A DNA stretch of 64,000 nt. It comes from Podarcis bocagei (lineage: Eukaryota). The notes beneath the pieces were generated by a model that was given only the letters and a program-made list of their open reading frames with translations, searched no databases and was not told the DNA's origin. Positions 42,901 through 51,000 of the stretch are shown here, one piece after another. Position numbers and translations under genes: made by a program. The number at the start of each line of letters is the position of its first letter. The first letter of the stretch is position 1. The stretch is taken from NCBI GenBank assembly GCA_964188305.1, contig OZ076885.1. The stretch is one strand, 5' to 3'.

Positions 42901-45900
42901 GTACATATGAACAGATACATACTTGGCACACATACATTAATTCCAAGGCCAACTCAGTTCCTTACAACAAATGGGCATGCATGTCCAGCTGCATGCACAC
43001 ACGCACACAGTGAGAATTATGCAAGTGTATACTTAGTTAGGTACCATAGCCGGAGGATGATAAGAGTGAGGATAAAGTTGGGAAAGCAAACTCAGGAGGA
43101 AAGAAGAGGGAGATGAGGGAGTCTCAAGTGACCTAACGTAGCTCTGCACCCACCCTCTCAAAGATCCTTACTACACTCACTGCCTCTGCAGTAAACATGG
43201 AGTGTGCTGCCATTTTCACAGCATGACGGGTTTCAGCTTTCGCTTTTAAGAAAAACCGCTGGTATCCAGTTTCCCATTATTACAGGGGGGAAATAATAAA
43301 AATGTGTGGGCAGTGCCTGCTAATGGCTCAGAAACTGAAATGGATCTATATATGGTATGAGGAAGAGATTTGGCACTCGACACGGCTTATCATCTCTCCC
43401 TGTTTGCCTCCCTGCATCGCTACATTTCTAGAATAAAAGGGGTTCTTAACGGGGGGGTTTAAAATGTGTGTGTGTTGAATTTATCAAAAGTCGCATTAGT
43501 GTAGCCAAAAGCACCACTACCAAAGAGATAATCACATCACCATCATTACATCATTTGTTGGGTTCTTAATTACCATTCCCTTAAGCAACAGCGACCAGTC
43601 TCTCTTTCACGTCATCCTTATGGATGAGGTTACTACCTACCTCTGATTGTGCTTCTGTATTCTATATTTTCTCCAGATTTGCCTGCCTGAAGTTGTTTAA
43701 TAATCATAGAATCATAGAGTTGGAAAGGATCCTGAGGGTCATCTAGTCCAACCCCCTGCAATGAAGGAATCCTGCCCACAGCCATCCCTGGGAGGTCTTG
43801 GGCCCCCGATCTTCTGGTTAACAGTCAGATGCACTGACCTCAGGAATAGGTGAATATAAGAACATATGAAGACCCCAGCTGGGCCAGACCAATGGCCTAT
43901 CTAGTCCAGCATTCTGTCTCCACAGTAGTCAGCTAGAGAAAAAAAATATTTGTATCCACTTACTCTACACCATGCATAATTATATATTCCTGAATGATGT
44001 GCTCCCTTTACTTTACTTTTCTAAACTAAAATCCCCAAATGCGGATGGTGGCATCGAAACCCTCCTATTTCTCCCCATTAATCTAGGCCTTGGTGGGAAC
44101 AGTATAGGCCCCTGTCTATATGACAATCACAACCTCTTGTGACTGTCTCCACCTTTACCTACACCAAGCCAGCTATGGGGGTCTCTTCTCTGTGTGGGTG
44201 AAATCAAACATTCAGATAAAACGGCAATTTCCCATCCAATGGTCCTGTCTCGGTTTGGCTAATTTACATAAAGTGCAATCAAGCCTCAGTACAGCACTTT
44301 TATGTTCCACTAATCTCAAAAGGATTCGTTTTAAGCAGGTGCTTAATCTTCCCTTGAAGTAAATGGAACTCAGAAGTACTTAATATTAGCTCAGTTGCAC
44401 CCATAAGTCATAAATTTGGATTTGGGTTATCCAGGATTCGGAGGGCTTAAATGACTCGCTTGGTCATGGCAATTTCTTCGCTAGCCCATACCAGGACTGG
44501 TATTCCTTTTGAAATCAAAGGCGATATAGGCATTATTTTACTATCAATTTAAATAATATTGCCATGCGTCAGAAGAGTGAGTGCAGCTCACTGTGCTTGG
44601 GTTGTTTTTTTAAGTGCCGCAATTGATGCCCCAATTAAATGGGCATCTCTCAGAGTTTGGTGTTGGAGGGCCTATTACTGATGCCATTGGCTTTATGCGA
44701 AACAGGGTCAGCTCCAGGCCAAAGGAAGACAGCAAACCCCGGGGAGGGGAGGAGCTATGGAGACTCTGCTCTCTATGCTCATTAGGGAGTGGGAAGCCTG
44801 GGCCAGCAGCGGATACCTACCTATGCAGCCCATTGTCCTCATAGCAACATTTTAGGAGCGCGAAGGCAGGAGGCGATGGGGAGGGGGAAGATACTGCAGC
44901 AGAGGAAGCAGTAGGAGAGACAATGGCAGGATAGTGTGGGTGGCTTCAGAGGGTATAGAGAGTACAGCGGGGGCTGTGGATGGAGGGTGCCATGACATCA
45001 GGGATCGGGACAGTGATGATGGGGCTCGGGAAAGTTTCGGTGGTGCCTCGGAATCAATGACTTAAGAGGTTGAGGGTTCAGCGAGGGATTATGACTGGAG
45101 AGTAGGGGGGAAGAGATGGTCCCAGCATAATGGCCCTTGCACCCCACTCCACGGCCCCACGGCTACTTACACGTGCAAGGAGAGGGCACGGCCCCGGTAC
45201 AGGCTGAAGGCACTGCCGTAGGGGTCGCTCCCCAGAGACAGGCTGTCCTCGGACCCCGGGGCCACACCAATCAGCTCCGCCCGTGATGCCCGCACCAGCG
45301 GCTCCACCCCCAGGTGCCGGGCCTCGGCAGGTGCTTGCCTTGGAATGCTGGGGTGCAGGTAGGGTCCCCTCACCGTGGGGCCAGCCTCTGGGTCCTTCTC
45401 CAACACCGTGGTCTGGCTCCCTGACCAGTTGGAGTGCTCATCTGTCTGGGACAGGCCTGGCACTGAGGTCGGCGTGGTCTTCATGGAGGCATCCACCAGC
45501 GTGTCCGACTCCCCTGCAAGGAAAGATAGACATGGACTGATCGAGGGGGCTGGGAGGCCCTCCATCTCCCTTGCATCAGATGGGGGCCTGGTAACCCGAG
45601 ATTCTATCGATACTGTATTGTTTAATTTAGGAGGCTGTAAAGTATCAGTTTCTTGGAGCGTGCAGTGCCACTGCATATATCATGGGTTCGCGTCAGGCCG
45701 TGTTCTTTAGGGCTAAGAATAAGCATTTTTCTCTCAGCTGGAAAGGACAAAGAAGAGGGGCGAAGAAGGAAAAGAAGACAAGGCCAGGTTGGTCACTTAA
45801 TAACTCAGCCACCAAGATGAGGCGGCCAGAGTGAAGGGAAACACAATTATGCAACACACAAGGTTCAGGCATTTGCAGTGAAGGAAGGAGAGACGAACAA

Positions 45901-48054
45901 TTTCTTATTGCAATGATATAAATGAATATTCATGTAGCTCTTTTAACATGCACAGTGCATTGCAATCATTGACTTGTTTATCCTGCTTTGCAAGGTAGAT
46001 CATTGTTCCCCCAACTTTTTAGAGACTAGCTTACCCCAGACTACCTACTTAAGGAAGAGCAGCGATGGAAGGCCAGAACCGCAGTGCTCTGTGCCAGGCA
46101 CTGAAGACAAGTTCACTGGGTATAAAGTTGCCCAAACTGAAAATGGGAGCTTATGCCTTGTGTTGTTGTCCCTGGAACCACCCAAAAAGAGGCACCGGGA
46201 TGATCAAAACAATGGGAAACCTCTTTTGTGACAGAAAACGGGGACCTGTTTTTTTGTTCAGTAAAAAGAATGTGAGAGAATAGGACTGCAATTTTTTAAA
46301 AGAGACACTTCGAGAGGAAAGAACGATTTAAAACTAAAGGAGAATGTGGAAAGGCAAACAGGTGGCTAAAAGTTGCCCAATGAAAAACTGAGGTTGGAAA
46401 GCCAAAGAAGGTTGCTAACAGTGAAAAGTGCATGGGGAATAATCTCATACATTTACTCAAAAGAATGAATGGAAACTATTCACCTGCTTAGGTGGGTGCT
46501 CTCAGGGAAATAAACCTGACTCCCCACACTGCTGACTTCTGAGAATCCAGCTTGCTCCTATCTGCATAAACATGTGCACAGCTCCATCCTGAGTCCTGTT
46601 TCTTTGTCACCTGGGAGTGTGACTGGCTTTTTTATACAATATAACGTTATGCAGAACGATTACCGTATATATATATATATATATATATATGTAGGTTTTG
46701 GTGTCTTCGGGTGTCTTCCCGTGTAAGAGTTGGGGTGTCTAGGCGACGTTTCGACGAGGTCTCACTCGTCATCTTCAGGCTGGTGCTTTCGGCTTCTTGT
46801 TACTAGAACAGAGCAGGATCTCAGTGTTTGAGTTCCTATAAATACTGTTGAGGGGGTGTGGTGTATAGCCTCCAACGTTCTGGGCAGATAGGAAGTTCCT
46901 AGGTTAATGTGCCTTTTCTTCTTTTGTTCATTAATTACTTGAGGGATATCTTGAGTGATTACTTGAGTGATATTCTGAGTACCACTTAGGAGGGTCATTA
47001 GGTGTGGATTAGTTGCTAAAGCTTTCGTGTCTTGACCTCTTGACCTTGTGAAGAGTTTTTCTGAGAAGATGGCTGTACTGCACTTAGTTGTGCTCTGGCT
47101 TGGCTTTATCTGTGGAGAGGGTCTGGGTTTGGGTCTGGTGTGGTTGATTGGAGATGGCGTTCTGTGTGCCTCTGGTTCTGGTGTCGGTTTTTGTGGGGAG
47201 GGCTAATTTCCAGATGTCTGGCAGGCGGGACGTGTCGTCACGCTTGTTCATGTTGTGAGGGTGTTTCTCTATCTCGATGGCTTCCATGATTATTCTCTTG
47301 TGGTGATGTTCCATGTTAAAGAGCAATTTGGAATCTGCAAAATTAATTTCGTGTCCTGTTTCTTTCATGTGTTGGTAAAGAGAGGAAGTTTTTCATGTGT
47401 TGGTAAAGAGAGGTAAAGAGAGAAGGCACACAGAACGCCATCTCCAATCAACCACACCAGACCCAAACCCAGACCCTCTCCACAGATAAATTACAGACAC
47501 CATCCAGTAGCCAAACCATAGTGGCACCTCCGGATGCTGCACCCCCCTGCAATCCCTACACAGATCTGGCTGGCACAGGGCACAAAACCACAGCTCGCCC
47601 CTATACACGAAGCCAAGCCAGAGCACAACTAAGTGCAGTACAGCCATCTTCTCAGAAAAACTCTTCACAAGGTCAAGAGGTCAAGACACGAAAGCTTTAG
47701 CAACTAATCCACACCTAATGACCCTCCTAAGTGGTACTCAGAATATCACTCAAGTAATCACTCAAGATATCCCTCAAGTAATTAATGAACAAAAGAAGAA
47801 AAGGCACATTAACCTAGGAACTTCCTATCTGCCCAGAACGTTGGAGGCTATACACCACACCCCCTCAACAGTATTTATAGGAACTCAAACACTGAGATCC
47901 TGCTCTGTTCTAGTAACAAGAAGCCGAAAGCACCAGCCTGAAGATGACGAGTGAGACCTCGTCGAAACGTCGCCTAGACACCCCAACTCTTACACGGGAA
48001 GACACCCGAAGACACCAAAACCTACATTCCTGTACCCGTGAAAATCTACGAAAG

Positions 48055-48090
<36 letters not shown>

Positions 48091-51000
48091 CATTGACACT
48101 TAAACCCTGCTCATTAAAGATTCCAAGTGTTGCTCAATTCAGAATACAGCCCCCATTAAGCACAATTTGCTAACTGGGATGCATGATCAACCAAGGGCTC
48201 TATCTCCCCCTGCCCCATTTGCCTAGTCATTCTGTGGAAGCTGCATGAGCACCGTCTGAAGTGACCGTGTACTGAAGGAACCCAGCATGAGGAGGCTACA
48301 GTTAAAGGCTGCGATTTTTCAGTTTTATTTCTGTGGAATCTAATGACCTTTATGCTTTGCTGAGTCCTCCTCCGATATAAAGTTGCCCTCTTTATTAAAT
48401 TAATGTTCTGCGTCGGTTAATATGTGCCCTTCTTCCAGGAAAAGGTGATGTCAGGTTGGCTATGTCTCCGGGGAGCAGTAATTCTCATGCTCCAATGGTA
48501 GCTGCCTGCAAAAAGGAACCCTGAAGAGAGAGTTAAACTCTTTGGCCAATGATCCAAAAAAGCTGGACACTCAGGGACAGAAGAAGACCCTGCTCATAGG
48601 ATTCATGGTGAACAAATCACGGGGGAGTGGGGCTATTTGTACTGGCATGGTATATGTGACATACCACTCTTGCCTCAGAAAGGGCCAGGCAAGGATAGGA
48701 TAGAAAACAGAGGAAGATGGAAAGGAATTGCTGAAATAATTAATAGAAGTGGAATACAAAAAGGGAGGTGTGAGGAGGTTGTGGAAATTAGTGAAAGAAA
48801 GATAAGATATTGAAATTGGACTGTGTTTTAAATGGTTTTTGTTTTGTTTTGTTAGTTGTATGTTAGTGTTTTGCAGTTGTTTTTTGTATTGTATTGTATT
48901 GTATTATTGTATGTTTTTTCTTTTTTGTTTTTTTGTAGTGTTGTGTTCAATTTGTTGGAAAACTAATAAATATTATTATAAAAAAACAACAGAAAGGGCC
49001 AGGCAGCAGGGAGGCTACAGTCTCGGGATTATGAGGGGATTTGGGGGCAGGATTGCTGGGGCGTCAGCAGCAACATCTTTGGTTTGAAATATAGTTCCAT
49101 GCCCATTCTGCTCAGAGTGCTTGCCAAACCTCTCCATTCACCTGCCTTCTTCTCCTCACCTGTTGGGGAGCTATAGGTGGTCTCATCCTGGAGCTGGCTG
49201 CGTTGGGTCACCTGTGTGCTGCTGGCATCATCTTCTCCCGTCTCCGAGTCTGAAGCAAGAGAAAGGACAAGGTGAGGGAGGACCTTGATCAACAGGTCAG
49301 TCCACACCTTCGCCTCGGGTGCTTGTACCCATCCATCAAAACTGTATGGCAGAGTCACAAACAGATCCCGTGAGACTCAGAAGTCCCAAGTAAGATCTTG
49401 AAAATTCAGCTCTCAGTAAAGGGGTGGCTGGATTGTGACAAAATTGACTCCTTTATTGGTGTTATGAAGAGAAGGTACAATATAAAAATTGAATTGCATA
49501 AAATAATTACTCATTATTGGAAATAATTGTCTATATTTCTGGTGATTCTTTTATCATAAGTGTTTACTAACGTATGGGGGGGCACAGAGGAAAAACATAC
49601 AAAATGGTGTCAGATGTGCTGCTCCAGCACAGATGCTCTTAAACCACCGTCAATGCCCAGTTTTAGAGAATCCTGGAGCAGGGCTCTGTTATGCTCACAG
49701 TTTTATTGTTGTAGCATTGGAAAGGCATTGAACAATATTTGTTTTAGGGTTGTATTTGTGGCATTCTAGGTCATTTTATACATTAGTGTGGTTTTATTTT
49801 GGGCTAAGGCTTATCATTTTGAATGCTCTGAATGTAATGAAAGACATGATGGCTGGTCACTAAATACAATGAAATGAATCTGATTCTAAGAAGCATTCTC
49901 TTTGTAGAGTTTCCATTTTCTTTCAGGGCTCCCCTAATTTGCAATATGCCCAACAGCAATGACCTGGAGTCTACCATACTCAGGGAAAGGCATCAAATGG
50001 CAAACTGTGTTGACTCAGCCATGTGCAAGAACATATGCAGATTATCCAGGGCCTTGCAAAACCAGTGGCATCCTTGCAGTGCAGGTTTCAACTCTCAATA
50101 ATTTGCCACCCTCTCAGGATCTAGATACTCAGGGCTGCCATAGTGCCTAGAGGAAAACAAATACCAAAGCTGCAAGTAAGGAAGCCTGGAAGGCCCATTC
50201 CTTCTCCCTTGAAAAGAGCCCAAGGGAGGAGGTGATTTGTATCTCTGTGATTCTACCTCTGCGGAATTCCAGAACTTTGTCTGCTAGGTAAACAAGGGCC
50301 CTGAACATTGGAAGAGGCAAGTGGAAGGGGGGGGGTCCCCCTCCCTTTCTTTTTGCATTTTCTTAGATGCAAATTACTGCCTCAGAAGCCACACTTTGCA
50401 AGGGAAAATGGGCTTTCATGGCAAAACTTCATATTATAGACATATTTTCTCTTTTAAAAAATGAATGTCAGGCTGCAATCTGGATCAGAAGACCTGTGGG
50501 TGGGAAGGAGGTGCTTTTTCCCGGCAGCCATTTTTCTGCTTATAATTGCCTTTCCCCTCCCCCTGCTGCTTTCCTCTCCACAGGGAGAAAGATATGGGAG
50601 GGGGGCTGTAGCTTCTTCCCTGCAGGTGGAAAGAGTAGTTTAATGGGAACTAATCTGAGTGGGAAAACACGCTGGTGGGAATACCTTAAGCCTTCCCAAG
50701 CCACCATTCCTTTACGCCCAATTACAGCCTCCTGAAATCTGAAAAAGTTACATGCCACTACATATTAACATGTAGGTTATCATTCTGCCCCCCCCCCCCC
50801 GGTTCAACAGCAACCTCAGAGACATTCCATGGAAGCATGACAGATTGCTCCCAAGTACAGCCTGGATTGCACATCCCCAAAGAAGGACTGGATAAAAATA
50901 TACATAAATTAGTAAGTCGTTGGAGTCAAATACTGAGAGCCCAGGAGTCTGCCCCTCTTGGGCATGGTGGCTCCTCCATAAAGAAAAGAAAGGAAAGGAA

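What the first reader, a model, noticed from the sequence alone, without database searches (positions are those of the whole stretch)
46689..48058. Intronic Penelope inverted repeat: a hammerhead ribozyme in the SPEG pre-mRNA paired with its own antisense copy
Seen: arms 46689-47106 and 47610-48027 are collinear reverse complements (418 bp, no indels, no mismatch in the stretches checked by eye, identical 78-aa ORFs on opposite strands), and each holds a hammerhead core. SPEG is transcribed from high to low coordinates, so the pre-mRNA first makes the antisense copy (47975-47932) and ~1.2 kb later the catalytic-sense copy (46784-46741). Known: Penelope-like pseudo-LTRs carry minimal hammerheads and can insert with inverted pLTRs. 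Inference: the nascent intron folds into a ~420-bp duplex that sequesters the ribozyme and protects the host transcript from cleavage. The duplex would also be an ADAR/Dicer substrate and could affect splicing between exons 49160 and 45513.
Basis: partly seen in the sequence, partly recalled or inferred. Interest (0 to 1): 0.8.

Follow-up and report, generated by a model that had tools for sequence, protein, structure and literature searches.

The report
Head-to-head Penelope insertion in SPEG intron
A young jumping gene of the Penelope class landed in a (TA)n tract inside an intron of a lizard SPEG gene as two mirror-image partial copies, each with the element's own minimal hammerhead motif; this is how such elements usually insert, and nothing shows that it protects or affects SPEG.

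Summary
Arms 46689-47106 and 47610-48027 are 418 nt and 100% complementary, and a second perfect 67-nt pair extends them. Each arm carries a minimal hammerhead, expected about 0.005 times per window by chance. The host gene is SPEG on the minus strand, and the insert lies in a 3,646-nt intron.

It is two 5'-truncated copies of a Poseidon/Penelope-clade retroelement, joined head to head between two halves of a (TA)n microsatellite. Each copy holds element sequence the other lacks:
- left copy: 221 nt more of the endonuclease ORF;
- right copy: an ancestral 119-nt stretch and the 30-nt PLE "tail".

So the copies were reverse-transcribed independently. This excludes snap-back synthesis and an assembly fold-back. 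Their outer ends lie 84 and 114 nt into the element's ORF, matching the two RT start sites published for the anole element PAc.

The SPEG pre-mRNA is predicted to fold into a roughly 485-bp hairpin that buries the sense hammerhead. "Protection" is unsupported: the motif has a 2-bp helix I and cannot close helix III as a monomer, and published PLE hammerheads are inactive alone.

The scan noted similar palindromic insertions elsewhere in this genome. Verdict: ordinary.

The parts
46666..46690 (.). (TA)12.5, the left half of the target microsatellite
   Evidence: TRF; sequence
46689..47392 (-). Left PLE copy in SPEG-sense orientation. It is 5'-truncated, has no tail, and carries a 119-nt deletion at 47105/47106 relative to the right copy.
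46689..46772 (-). First 84 nt of the PLE ORF (ATG at 46772-46770). The copy ends at the inner, no-tail RT start site and abuts (TA)n.
   Evidence: (ORF 46647-46772); PMC11167929
46745..46778 (-). Minimal hammerhead core, catalytic sense in the SPEG pre-mRNA. The predicted cut lies between 46745 and 46744.
46762..46998 (-). 78-aa ORF, a remnant of the C-terminal extension of the PLE ORF. It ends at the TGA in hammerhead loop II.
47084..47392 (-). Coding remnant of the C-terminal half of the GIY-YIG endonuclease domain. The stretch 47172-47392 is absent from the right copy.
47393..47423 (.). Head-to-head junction filler. It is a templated duplication of 47365-47385 followed by 47377-47385.
   Evidence: sequence; TRF row 47402-47422
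47424..48057 (+). Right PLE copy, antisense to SPEG. It is 5'-truncated and carries the tail.
47491..47609 (+). 119 nt present only in the right copy. It is in frame and collinear with the related PLE protein P0047, so it is ancestral and was deleted from the left copy at a 2-nt microhomology.
47938..47971 (+). Minimal hammerhead core on the + strand: C3-A9 at 47938-47944, bulged U at 47945, helix II 47946-47951/47958-47963, GAA 47964-47966, A-CG-U 47967-47970, C17 at 47971. The PLE ATG (47944-47946) is A9-U-G10.1.
   Evidence: layout as in PAc
48028..48057 (+). 30-nt PLE 'tail'. This copy ends 114 nt into the ORF, at the outer RT start site.
   Evidence: PMC11167929, PMC8557442
48058..48087 (.). 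(AT)15, the right half of the target microsatellite
49160..49249 (-). Upstream SPEG exon (90 nt), with GTGAGG donor after 49160
45326..45513 (-). Start of the downstream SPEG exon, with acceptor AG at 45515-45514.

Best explanation
This is one recent integration of a Poseidon/Penelope-clade Penelope-like element (PLE) into a (TA)n microsatellite in a SPEG intron of a lacertid lizard. The inferred mechanism is that the element's GIY-YIG endonuclease cut both strands of the AT-rich target. Each 3' end then primed reverse transcription at one of the element's two internal start sites, 84 or 114 nt into the next ORF of the tandem RNA. The two cDNAs grew towards each other, each stopped early, and they were joined through a short templated filler. 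The product is two mirror-image copies. Each carries the end of the endonuclease ORF, the pLTR, and the element's own minimal hammerhead, which overlaps the ORF start codon. The hammerheads belong to the element, not to the host. In the SPEG pre-mRNA the insert should fold into a roughly 485-bp hairpin with a 119-nt bulge and a 252-nt loop. That fold is a passive by-product of the insertion. Shown here: the anatomy, the homology and the predicted fold. Inferred: the two-strand priming mechanism, the young age, and neutrality for SPEG.
For: Perfect arms of 418 + 67 nt.

Each arm has element sequence the other lacks: 47172-47392 is left only, and 47491-47609 plus the tail 48028-48057 are right only. 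The 119 nt are collinear with a related PLE protein. Neither arm can therefore be a copy of the other.

The endonuclease fragment has 203 homologs at E<=1e-3. The long ones carry RVT_1 followed by GIY-YIG, with the match at their C-terminus. By eye, about 40% of positions are identical to the PAc C-terminus printed.

The hammerhead shows every conserved PLE min-HHR feature: CUGANGA, an unpaired U between positions 9 and 10.1, G10.1-C11.1, a 6-bp helix II, GAAA, palindromic ACGU and C17 (criteria from PMC4209133). The ATG sits at A9-U-G10.1 and the cut site is 25 nt after the start codon. In PAc the ORF begins at stem II and the cut is 26 bp downstream.

The outer ends at +84 and +114 with a 30-nt tail match PAc RT initiation at 111-118 and a 30-40 bp tail. 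PAc cleaves and extends both DNA strands and prefers AT-rich sites.

(TA)n lies on both sides.

The same core is identical in a relative whose aligned flanks are about 81% identical (L001). It shows compensatory changes in helices II and I in a more distant relative (L003).

An older fold-back of the same lineage lies between (TA)n tracts in another assembly, with both hammerheads decayed (L002).

The literature describes an inverted 5'-truncated copy as frequent in PLEs, and notes dual min-HHRs 100-700 bp apart on opposite strands.
Against: There is no read-level evidence. Whether the insertion is fixed or polymorphic is unknown. Two-strand priming has been shown only in vitro, for the anole element, and is an inference for this locus. 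The two copies are identical over 485 nt yet differ by a 119-nt deletion, which requires either a template jump during reverse transcription or a later deletion. Neutrality for SPEG is assumed, not measured.
Confidence: 0.87

Rival explanations
1. One reading: the antisense arm exists, or is retained, because it sequesters a host-sense hammerhead that would otherwise cut the SPEG pre-mRNA. On this view the fold-back form is a protective, selected or filtered configuration.
For: The predicted MFE pairs all 44 hammerhead positions with the antisense copy. The antisense copy is transcribed first, so zippering from the loop would reach the ribozyme as it emerges (orientation). A 2026 preprint reports depletion of hammerhead-bearing retrozymes from Xenopus introns, so some cost of genic hammerhead repeats is conceivable.
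Against: The monomer cannot close helix III because of its 2-nt loop, and helix I is 2 bp. Only one sense copy exists per transcript. Single PLE min-HHRs show no detectable cleavage. The PAc hammerhead needs PLE protein, and no RNA ends are seen at its cut site in vivo. The inverted form arises from the insertion mechanism, and it also occurs in L002, whose gene context I did not determine. The arms are 100% identical, so there has been no time for selection. In the older L002 fold-back both hammerheads decayed, which is what neutrality predicts.
Confidence: 0.04
2. The hairpin is biologically active as double-stranded RNA. It would be ADAR-edited and/or diced into small RNAs that act on the PLE family or on SPEG splicing or expression.
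For: A perfect intramolecular duplex of about 485 bp is predicted. In Drosophila strains transformed with Penelope, siRNAs map precisely to inverted regions of rearranged Penelope copies (PMC3681739). That long intronic inverted repeats are typical ADAR substrates in vertebrates is my own knowledge, not tested here.
Against: No RNA data could be laid. Of the listed runs that hold the stretch, none is on record as RNA. Vertebrate somatic cells process long dsRNA into siRNA poorly (my own knowledge). The review itself says such siRNAs do not silence Penelope efficiently.
Confidence: 0.12
3. The palindrome is an artefact or a secondary product: an assembly fold-back from a chimeric long read, or snap-back self-priming of a single cDNA that copied one arm from the other.
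For: The arms are 100% identical, which copying one arm from the other would give automatically. PLE tandem and inverted structures are known to trouble assemblies (PMC8557442).
Against: Each arm contains element-derived sequence missing from the other: 221 nt of the endonuclease ORF on the left, and the ancestral 119 nt plus the 30-nt tail on the right. Neither arm can be templated by the other. The flanks are not inverted copies of each other, and both ends fall on known RT start sites next to (TA)n. The junction has its own templated filler.
Confidence: 0.03

Closest known systems
PAc, the Poseidon-type Penelope-like element of Anolis carolinensis (Frangieh et al. 2024, PMC11167929)
   Same: The start codon sits at the beginning of hammerhead stem II, with C3 and G8 upstream of it. 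The cut site is about 26 nt after the ATG (25 here). The GAAACGUC helix III segment is the same. Copy ends lie about 111-118 nt into the ORF, or about 30 nt earlier, which is the 'tail'. The target is AT-rich, and both DNA strands are cut and extended. The C-terminal endonuclease motif ...EAIEI.KH..N.N... is shared.
   Different: It is a different family in a lacertid. Helix II has a different sequence (GACGAG/CUCGUC), and the family ORF runs on through the pLTR to a stop in the next hammerhead. The nucleotide correspondence to PAc was judged by eye from the 240 nt printed, not computed.
Minimal hammerheads of metazoan PLEs (Cervera and de la Pena 2014, PMC4209133), especially the D. virilis Penelope variant
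   Same: [quoted passage not shown] That paper also reports pairs of motifs 100-700 bp apart on opposite strands.
   Different: Here the two motifs are 1,160 nt apart. No cleavage assay exists for this sequence, and Rfam models do not detect it.
Canonical PLE insertion anatomy: a 5'-truncated inverted copy next to the element, a tail at one end, and microsatellite targets (Craig et al. 2021, PMC8557442; Evgen'ev 2013, PMC3681739)
   Same: Inverted 5'-truncated copies, a 30-nt tail at one end only, insertion into (TA)n with no discernible target-site duplication, and terminal repeats in inverse orientation.
   Different: There is no full-length ORF between the arms. Both copies are short stumps (about 0.7 and 0.63 kb), so the unit is dead on arrival.
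[quoted passage not shown]
   Same: A hammerhead motif in the sense orientation inside a host intron.
   Different: Those are canonical, monomer-active and ultraconserved. This one is a days-old (in evolutionary terms) transposon motif that lacks a monomeric helix III, and there is no evidence of conservation at this locus.
Twin priming of L1 (my own knowledge)
   Same: Both nicked target strands prime reverse transcription, and the two cDNAs are joined head to head by microhomology.
   Different: In L1 twin priming the two segments are different parts of one RNA and do not overlap. Here both arms copy the same 3' region, so a long perfect inverted repeat results.

Membership tests
Penelope-like element, EN+ Penelope/Poseidon clade | [quoted passage not shown] | tested here: met
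   Only the C-terminal endonuclease remnant survives (47392-47084, minus strand). It has 203 homologs at E<=1e-3. The long homologs carry RVT_1, and P0104 and P0044 carry GIY-YIG immediately before the matched stretch. The RT part is absent because both copies are 5'-truncated.
Penelope-like element, EN+ Penelope/Poseidon clade | A hammerhead motif in the pLTR | tested here: met
Penelope-like element, EN+ Penelope/Poseidon clade | A 30-40 bp tail present at only one end, with copy ends at internal RT start sites | tested here: met
   The right arm ends at +114 of the ORF and the left at +84, giving a 30-nt tail at 48028-48057. Both L002 arms end at the homologous no-tail site.
Penelope-like element, EN+ Penelope/Poseidon clade | 5' truncation with an adjacent inverted copy, and an AT-rich or microsatellite target | tested here: met
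   literature
Hammerhead ribozyme (PLE min-HHR type) | Catalytic core of CUGANGA, GAAA and UH, in type I order | tested here: met
   CUGAAGA ... GAAA-CG-UC at 47938-47971 and on the opposite strand at 46778-46745
Hammerhead ribozyme (PLE min-HHR type) | Helix II closed by G10.1-C11.1, an unpaired nucleotide between 9 and 10.1, and support from covariation | tested here: met
   A 6-bp helix II with a bulged U. In L003 two pairs are changed on both sides (A-U to G-C, and G-C to A-U) and one goes to G-U (read by eye). There are only three distinct intact sequences, so no statistics were possible.
Hammerhead ribozyme (PLE min-HHR type) | Helix III, or a palindromic segment that allows a dimer | tested here: met
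   A15.1-CG-U16.1 reads ACGU, which is a palindrome. The 2-nt loop cannot close in a monomer, so a dimer is needed (sequence).
Hammerhead ribozyme (PLE min-HHR type) | Helix I flanking the core | tested here: inconclusive
   Only 2 contiguous pairs (GC/GC) here and 3 in L003, with one compensatory change. No helix I appears in the local MFE. The D. virilis variant also has 2 bp.
Hammerhead ribozyme (PLE min-HHR type) | A match to the curated Rfam hammerhead models | tested here: not met
   No hammerhead family was reported at E<=1 on 7 kb or at E<=10 on 172 nt.
Hammerhead ribozyme (PLE min-HHR type) | Self-cleavage at the predicted site | not testable with these tools
   This needs an in vitro assay or mapping of RNA ends. 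Published relatives are inactive as single motifs without PLE protein.
Retrozyme / circRNA-producing hammerhead repeat | Two or more hammerheads in direct orientation flanking a unit | tested here: not met
   The two motifs are on opposite strands, so each transcript has one sense copy.
Host-conserved intronic ribozyme | Conservation of the motif at the orthologous intron position across species | not tested

The most novel reading that the evidence does not exclude
Fold-back PLE insertions in transcribed introns, this one included, could be more than passive. Their long perfect hairpins might be edited or diced and feed back on the PLE family or on host splicing. Alternatively, intronic host-sense hammerheads might survive preferentially when masked by an inverted partner, giving a genome-wide filter detectable as an orientation or configuration bias.
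Probability: 0.08. Interest if true: 0.5.

Novelty: new member of a known kind. Interest (0 to 1): 0.14.

Why it matters
There is little consequence for SPEG biology. The locus does have value as an unusually clean natural record of PLE integration. Both arms end exactly at the two reverse-transcription start sites that were defined in vitro for the anole element. The two copies are demonstrably independent, and the head-to-head junction carries a templated filler. Together these features support, in a genome, the idea that both target strands prime cDNA synthesis. If RNA data later showed editing or small RNAs from such hairpins, the many intronic fold-backs of this genome would become a useful system for studying how vertebrates handle transposon-derived dsRNA.

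Tried and rejected
- **Rfam.** Searches on 44000-51000 (E<=1) and on 46689-46860 (E<=10) gave no hammerhead hit. They returned only (AT)n look-alikes of mir-297 and mir-1277 and a chance Giardia U4 hit.
- **Reads.** Editing, RNA ends, small RNAs, splice joints and presence or absence in organisms A-F could therefore not be examined. 
- **Exact-product look-ups.** The 94-aa and 78-aa element ORFs and a flanking 72-aa ORF are not on record. ORFs with GTG or TTG starts, including the junction-spanning 91-aa ORF, were not tried, because a reference translation would not reproduce the called product.
- **Metagenome scan.** An exact-pattern scan of metagenome contigs with the 34-nt core gave 0 matches.
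- **Pfam on the endonuclease remnant alone.** No significant family. The ESM Atlas gave only a weak GIY-YIG lead at 0.89.
- **Other copies in the window.** None.
- **Intron hypothesis for the 119 nt.** Rejected, because there is no GT..AG on either strand.
- **Retrozyme or circRNA reading.** Rejected on orientation.
- **Spliced model.** The SPEG exons were compared with P0001 and P0004 exon by exon, by reference.
- **PAc nucleotide comparison.** Done by eye rather than by typing the sequence into a tool.
Full report
**Observation**

The inverted repeat is real and exact. Arms 46689-47106 and 47610-48027 are 418 nt and 100% complementary. A second perfect pair, 47105-47171 / 47424-47490 (67 nt), continues them (blastn). 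The right arm has 119 extra nt (47491-47609) between the two blocks. A 252-nt unique centre (47172-47423) separates the copies. (TA)12.5 at 46666-46690 and (AT)15 at 48058-48087 flank the insert. No other copy of the element is in the window.

**The hammerhead**

The 34-nt string that holds the core occurs once on each strand, at 46778-46745 (-) and 47938-47971 (+). Read as RNA, it runs as follows:
- CUGAAGA (C3-A9)
- one unpaired U
- helix II, GACGAG / CUCGUC, 6 bp, closed by G10.1-C11.1
- GAA
- A15.1-CG-U16.1
- C17, the cleavage site

A descriptor of these features finds only these two sites in 64 kb. Simulated sequences gave a mean of 0.005 hits. [quoted passage not shown] The D. virilis variant also has a 2-nt palindromic insert and a 2-bp helix I (PMC4209133).

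Rfam's hammerhead models do not detect the motif. Helix I next to the core is only 2 bp, and no helix I appears in the local fold.

The core is identical in a relative whose aligned flanks are about 81% identical (L001). In a more distant relative (L003) two helix II pairs and one helix I pair are changed on both sides (read by eye). The motif is therefore conserved as an RNA structure within the element family.

**What the arms are**

The minus strand of 47392-47084 encodes the C-terminal half of a GIY-YIG endonuclease domain. An exhaustive HMMER search finds 203 relatives. The long ones have RVT_1 followed by GIY-YIG, with the match at their C-terminal end.

The ATG of the element's ORF is A9-U-G10.1 of the hammerhead, at 47944-47946 and 46772-46770. 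The cut site lies 25 nt after the start codon. [quoted passage not shown]

They match the end of the related PLE protein P0047 (...HQPEDDE), whose ORF runs through the whole pLTR and stops at the TGA in hammerhead loop II. In the window that extension is interrupted by a stop at 47698-47700 and a frame change.

Each arm therefore consists of the ORF end, the pLTR, the hammerhead, and the first 84 nt (left) or 114 nt (right) of the next ORF. This is the 3' part of a tandem PLE transcript.

**How it arose**

The right copy ends 114 nt into the ORF and the left copy 84 nt into it. The difference is the 30-nt stretch 48028-48057. For PAc, reverse transcription starts at two adjacent internal sites, the outer one 111-118 nt into the ORF. 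The 30-40 bp "tail" seen in a fraction of genomic copies is the sequence between the two sites. The PAc protein prefers AT-rich DNA and, unlike R2 or L1, cuts and extends both strands. By eye, short motifs in the first 120 nt of the PAc ORF are collinear with this element to within about 3 nt.

Each copy also holds element sequence the other lacks:
- The left copy reaches 221 nt further into the endonuclease ORF (47172-47392).
- The right copy has the tail and the 119 nt. The 119 nt are in frame and collinear with P0047, so they are ancestral.

Neither arm can have been copied from the other. This rules out snap-back synthesis and an assembly fold-back, and it means two independent reverse transcriptions met head to head. 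The junction (47393-47423) is a templated filler that repeats 47365-47385 and then 47377-47385. The left copy lost the 119 nt at a 2-nt microhomology, either by a template jump or later.

Zero differences in 485 nt put the insertion, under a squamate neutral rate of roughly 8e-10 per site per year (my own knowledge), below about 4 million years at 95%, barring gene conversion.

**Independent example**

A second case of the same anatomy exists. In L002 (assembly GCA_029282475.1) a related copy and an inverted partner lie between two (TA)n tracts. Both arms end at the homologous no-tail site. The two hammerheads have decayed in different ways, which is what neutral ageing predicts.

The literature describes an adjacent inverted 5'-truncated copy, a one-sided tail and microsatellite targets as typical of PLEs (PMC8557442). 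It also notes pairs of min-hammerheads on opposite strands.

Unchecked notes of this scan list similar palindromic insertions in other introns of this genome (IGF2BP3, KMT2C, VXN, SPAG1, SLC4A7, CCT6A, TET2). One of these was followed up and judged ordinary.

**Host context**

The 533-aa minus-strand exon at 41618-40020 matches proteins named striated muscle preferentially expressed protein kinase. The best match is Podarcis muralis at 89% identity, followed by unnamed contig proteins at 82-83% and Anolis at 82%. Exon 49249-49160 is 100% identical to residues 36-64 of the Anolis protein P0004. There it is followed directly by G-ESDTLV..., the start of the exon at 45513. GTGAGG and a polypyrimidine-AG site are in place.

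The element therefore lies in a 3,646-nt SPEG intron.

The fold is predicted. The minus-strand RNA 48120-46600 has an MFE of -1108 kcal/mol, with 481 arm-to-arm pairs and all 44 hammerhead positions paired to the antisense copy. Because the pairing nucleates next to the loop and the complement is made first, sequestration is also kinetically easy. That step is an inference.

There is little to protect against, however:
- A15.1-CG-U16.1 cannot close as a hairpin. The motif needs a second sense copy to build helix III from the ACGU palindrome, and the transcript has only one.
- Helix I is 2 bp.
- A single S. mansoni PLE motif showed no detectable cleavage, and dimers cleaved poorly.
- The PAc hammerhead cleaves only with PLE protein, and no RNA-seq reads start or end at its site.

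The inverted form is explained by the integration mechanism, and the insertion is too young to have been shaped by selection. The protective function therefore gets about 4%.

Processing of the hairpin by ADAR or Dicer is plausible. siRNAs map to inverted Penelope rearrangements in transformed flies (PMC3681739). It was not tested here.

**Limits**

I worked beside that place afterwards and sent none of its letters to any search tool.

Polymorphism, age by species distribution, editing, small RNAs and cleavage ends all remain open.

**Verdict**

The anatomy is the known, routine product of PLE integration, and the proposed host-protective role is unsupported. The locus is a tidy genomic illustration of two-site, two-strand priming by a PLE. 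It is of low general interest.

Noticed in passing
L001:59-730 (P0047); window 47718-47954 and 46998-46762: In this lacertid PLE family the ORF appears to run through the whole pLTR and stop at the TGA in loop II of the next hammerhead (...QPEDDE*). The ATG is A9-U-G10.1 of the same motif, in another frame. Start and stop therefore both lie inside the ribozyme. In the window the extension is broken by a stop at 47698-47700 and a frame change.
   Followed up: partly
window 47393-47423: The head-to-head junction is a templated filler. It repeats 47365-47385 and then 47377-47385, as polymerase slippage or templated end joining between two cDNAs would produce.
   Followed up: partly
L002:4399-5790 (GCA_029282475.1, JAPFRF010000016.1): An older fold-back of the same PLE lineage lies between two long (TA)n tracts. 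The arms are 99% complementary over 162 nt, and both end at the no-tail site. The left hammerhead has lost G12 and one helix II pair, and the right one has deletions in helix II. A Ras-family gene lies about 2.5 kb away.
   Followed up: partly
L003:892-953: A more distant PLE (endonuclease C-terminal fragment 56% identical) has the same hammerhead layout, with helix II GGCAAG/UUUGCC. Relative to the window's motif there are two compensatory pair changes in helix II and one in helix I.
   Followed up: partly
window 48039-48105: Weak Rfam matches to mir-297 and mir-1277 are only the (AT)15 tract folding on itself. They lie far below the gathering scores.
   Followed up: yes
window 46934-46980 and 47736-47782: Inside the pLTR there is a 12/24-nt tandem repeat (CTTGAGTGATAT-like, 2-3 copies) of unknown role. 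It is the same in both arms.
   Followed up: no
P0001 residues 1-25 versus window 49161-49247: The Podarcis muralis SPEG fragment in UniProt begins with 25 residues that do not match the window's upstream exon. The Anolis model matches that exon perfectly. This is probably an annotation or alternative first-exon difference.
   Followed up: no
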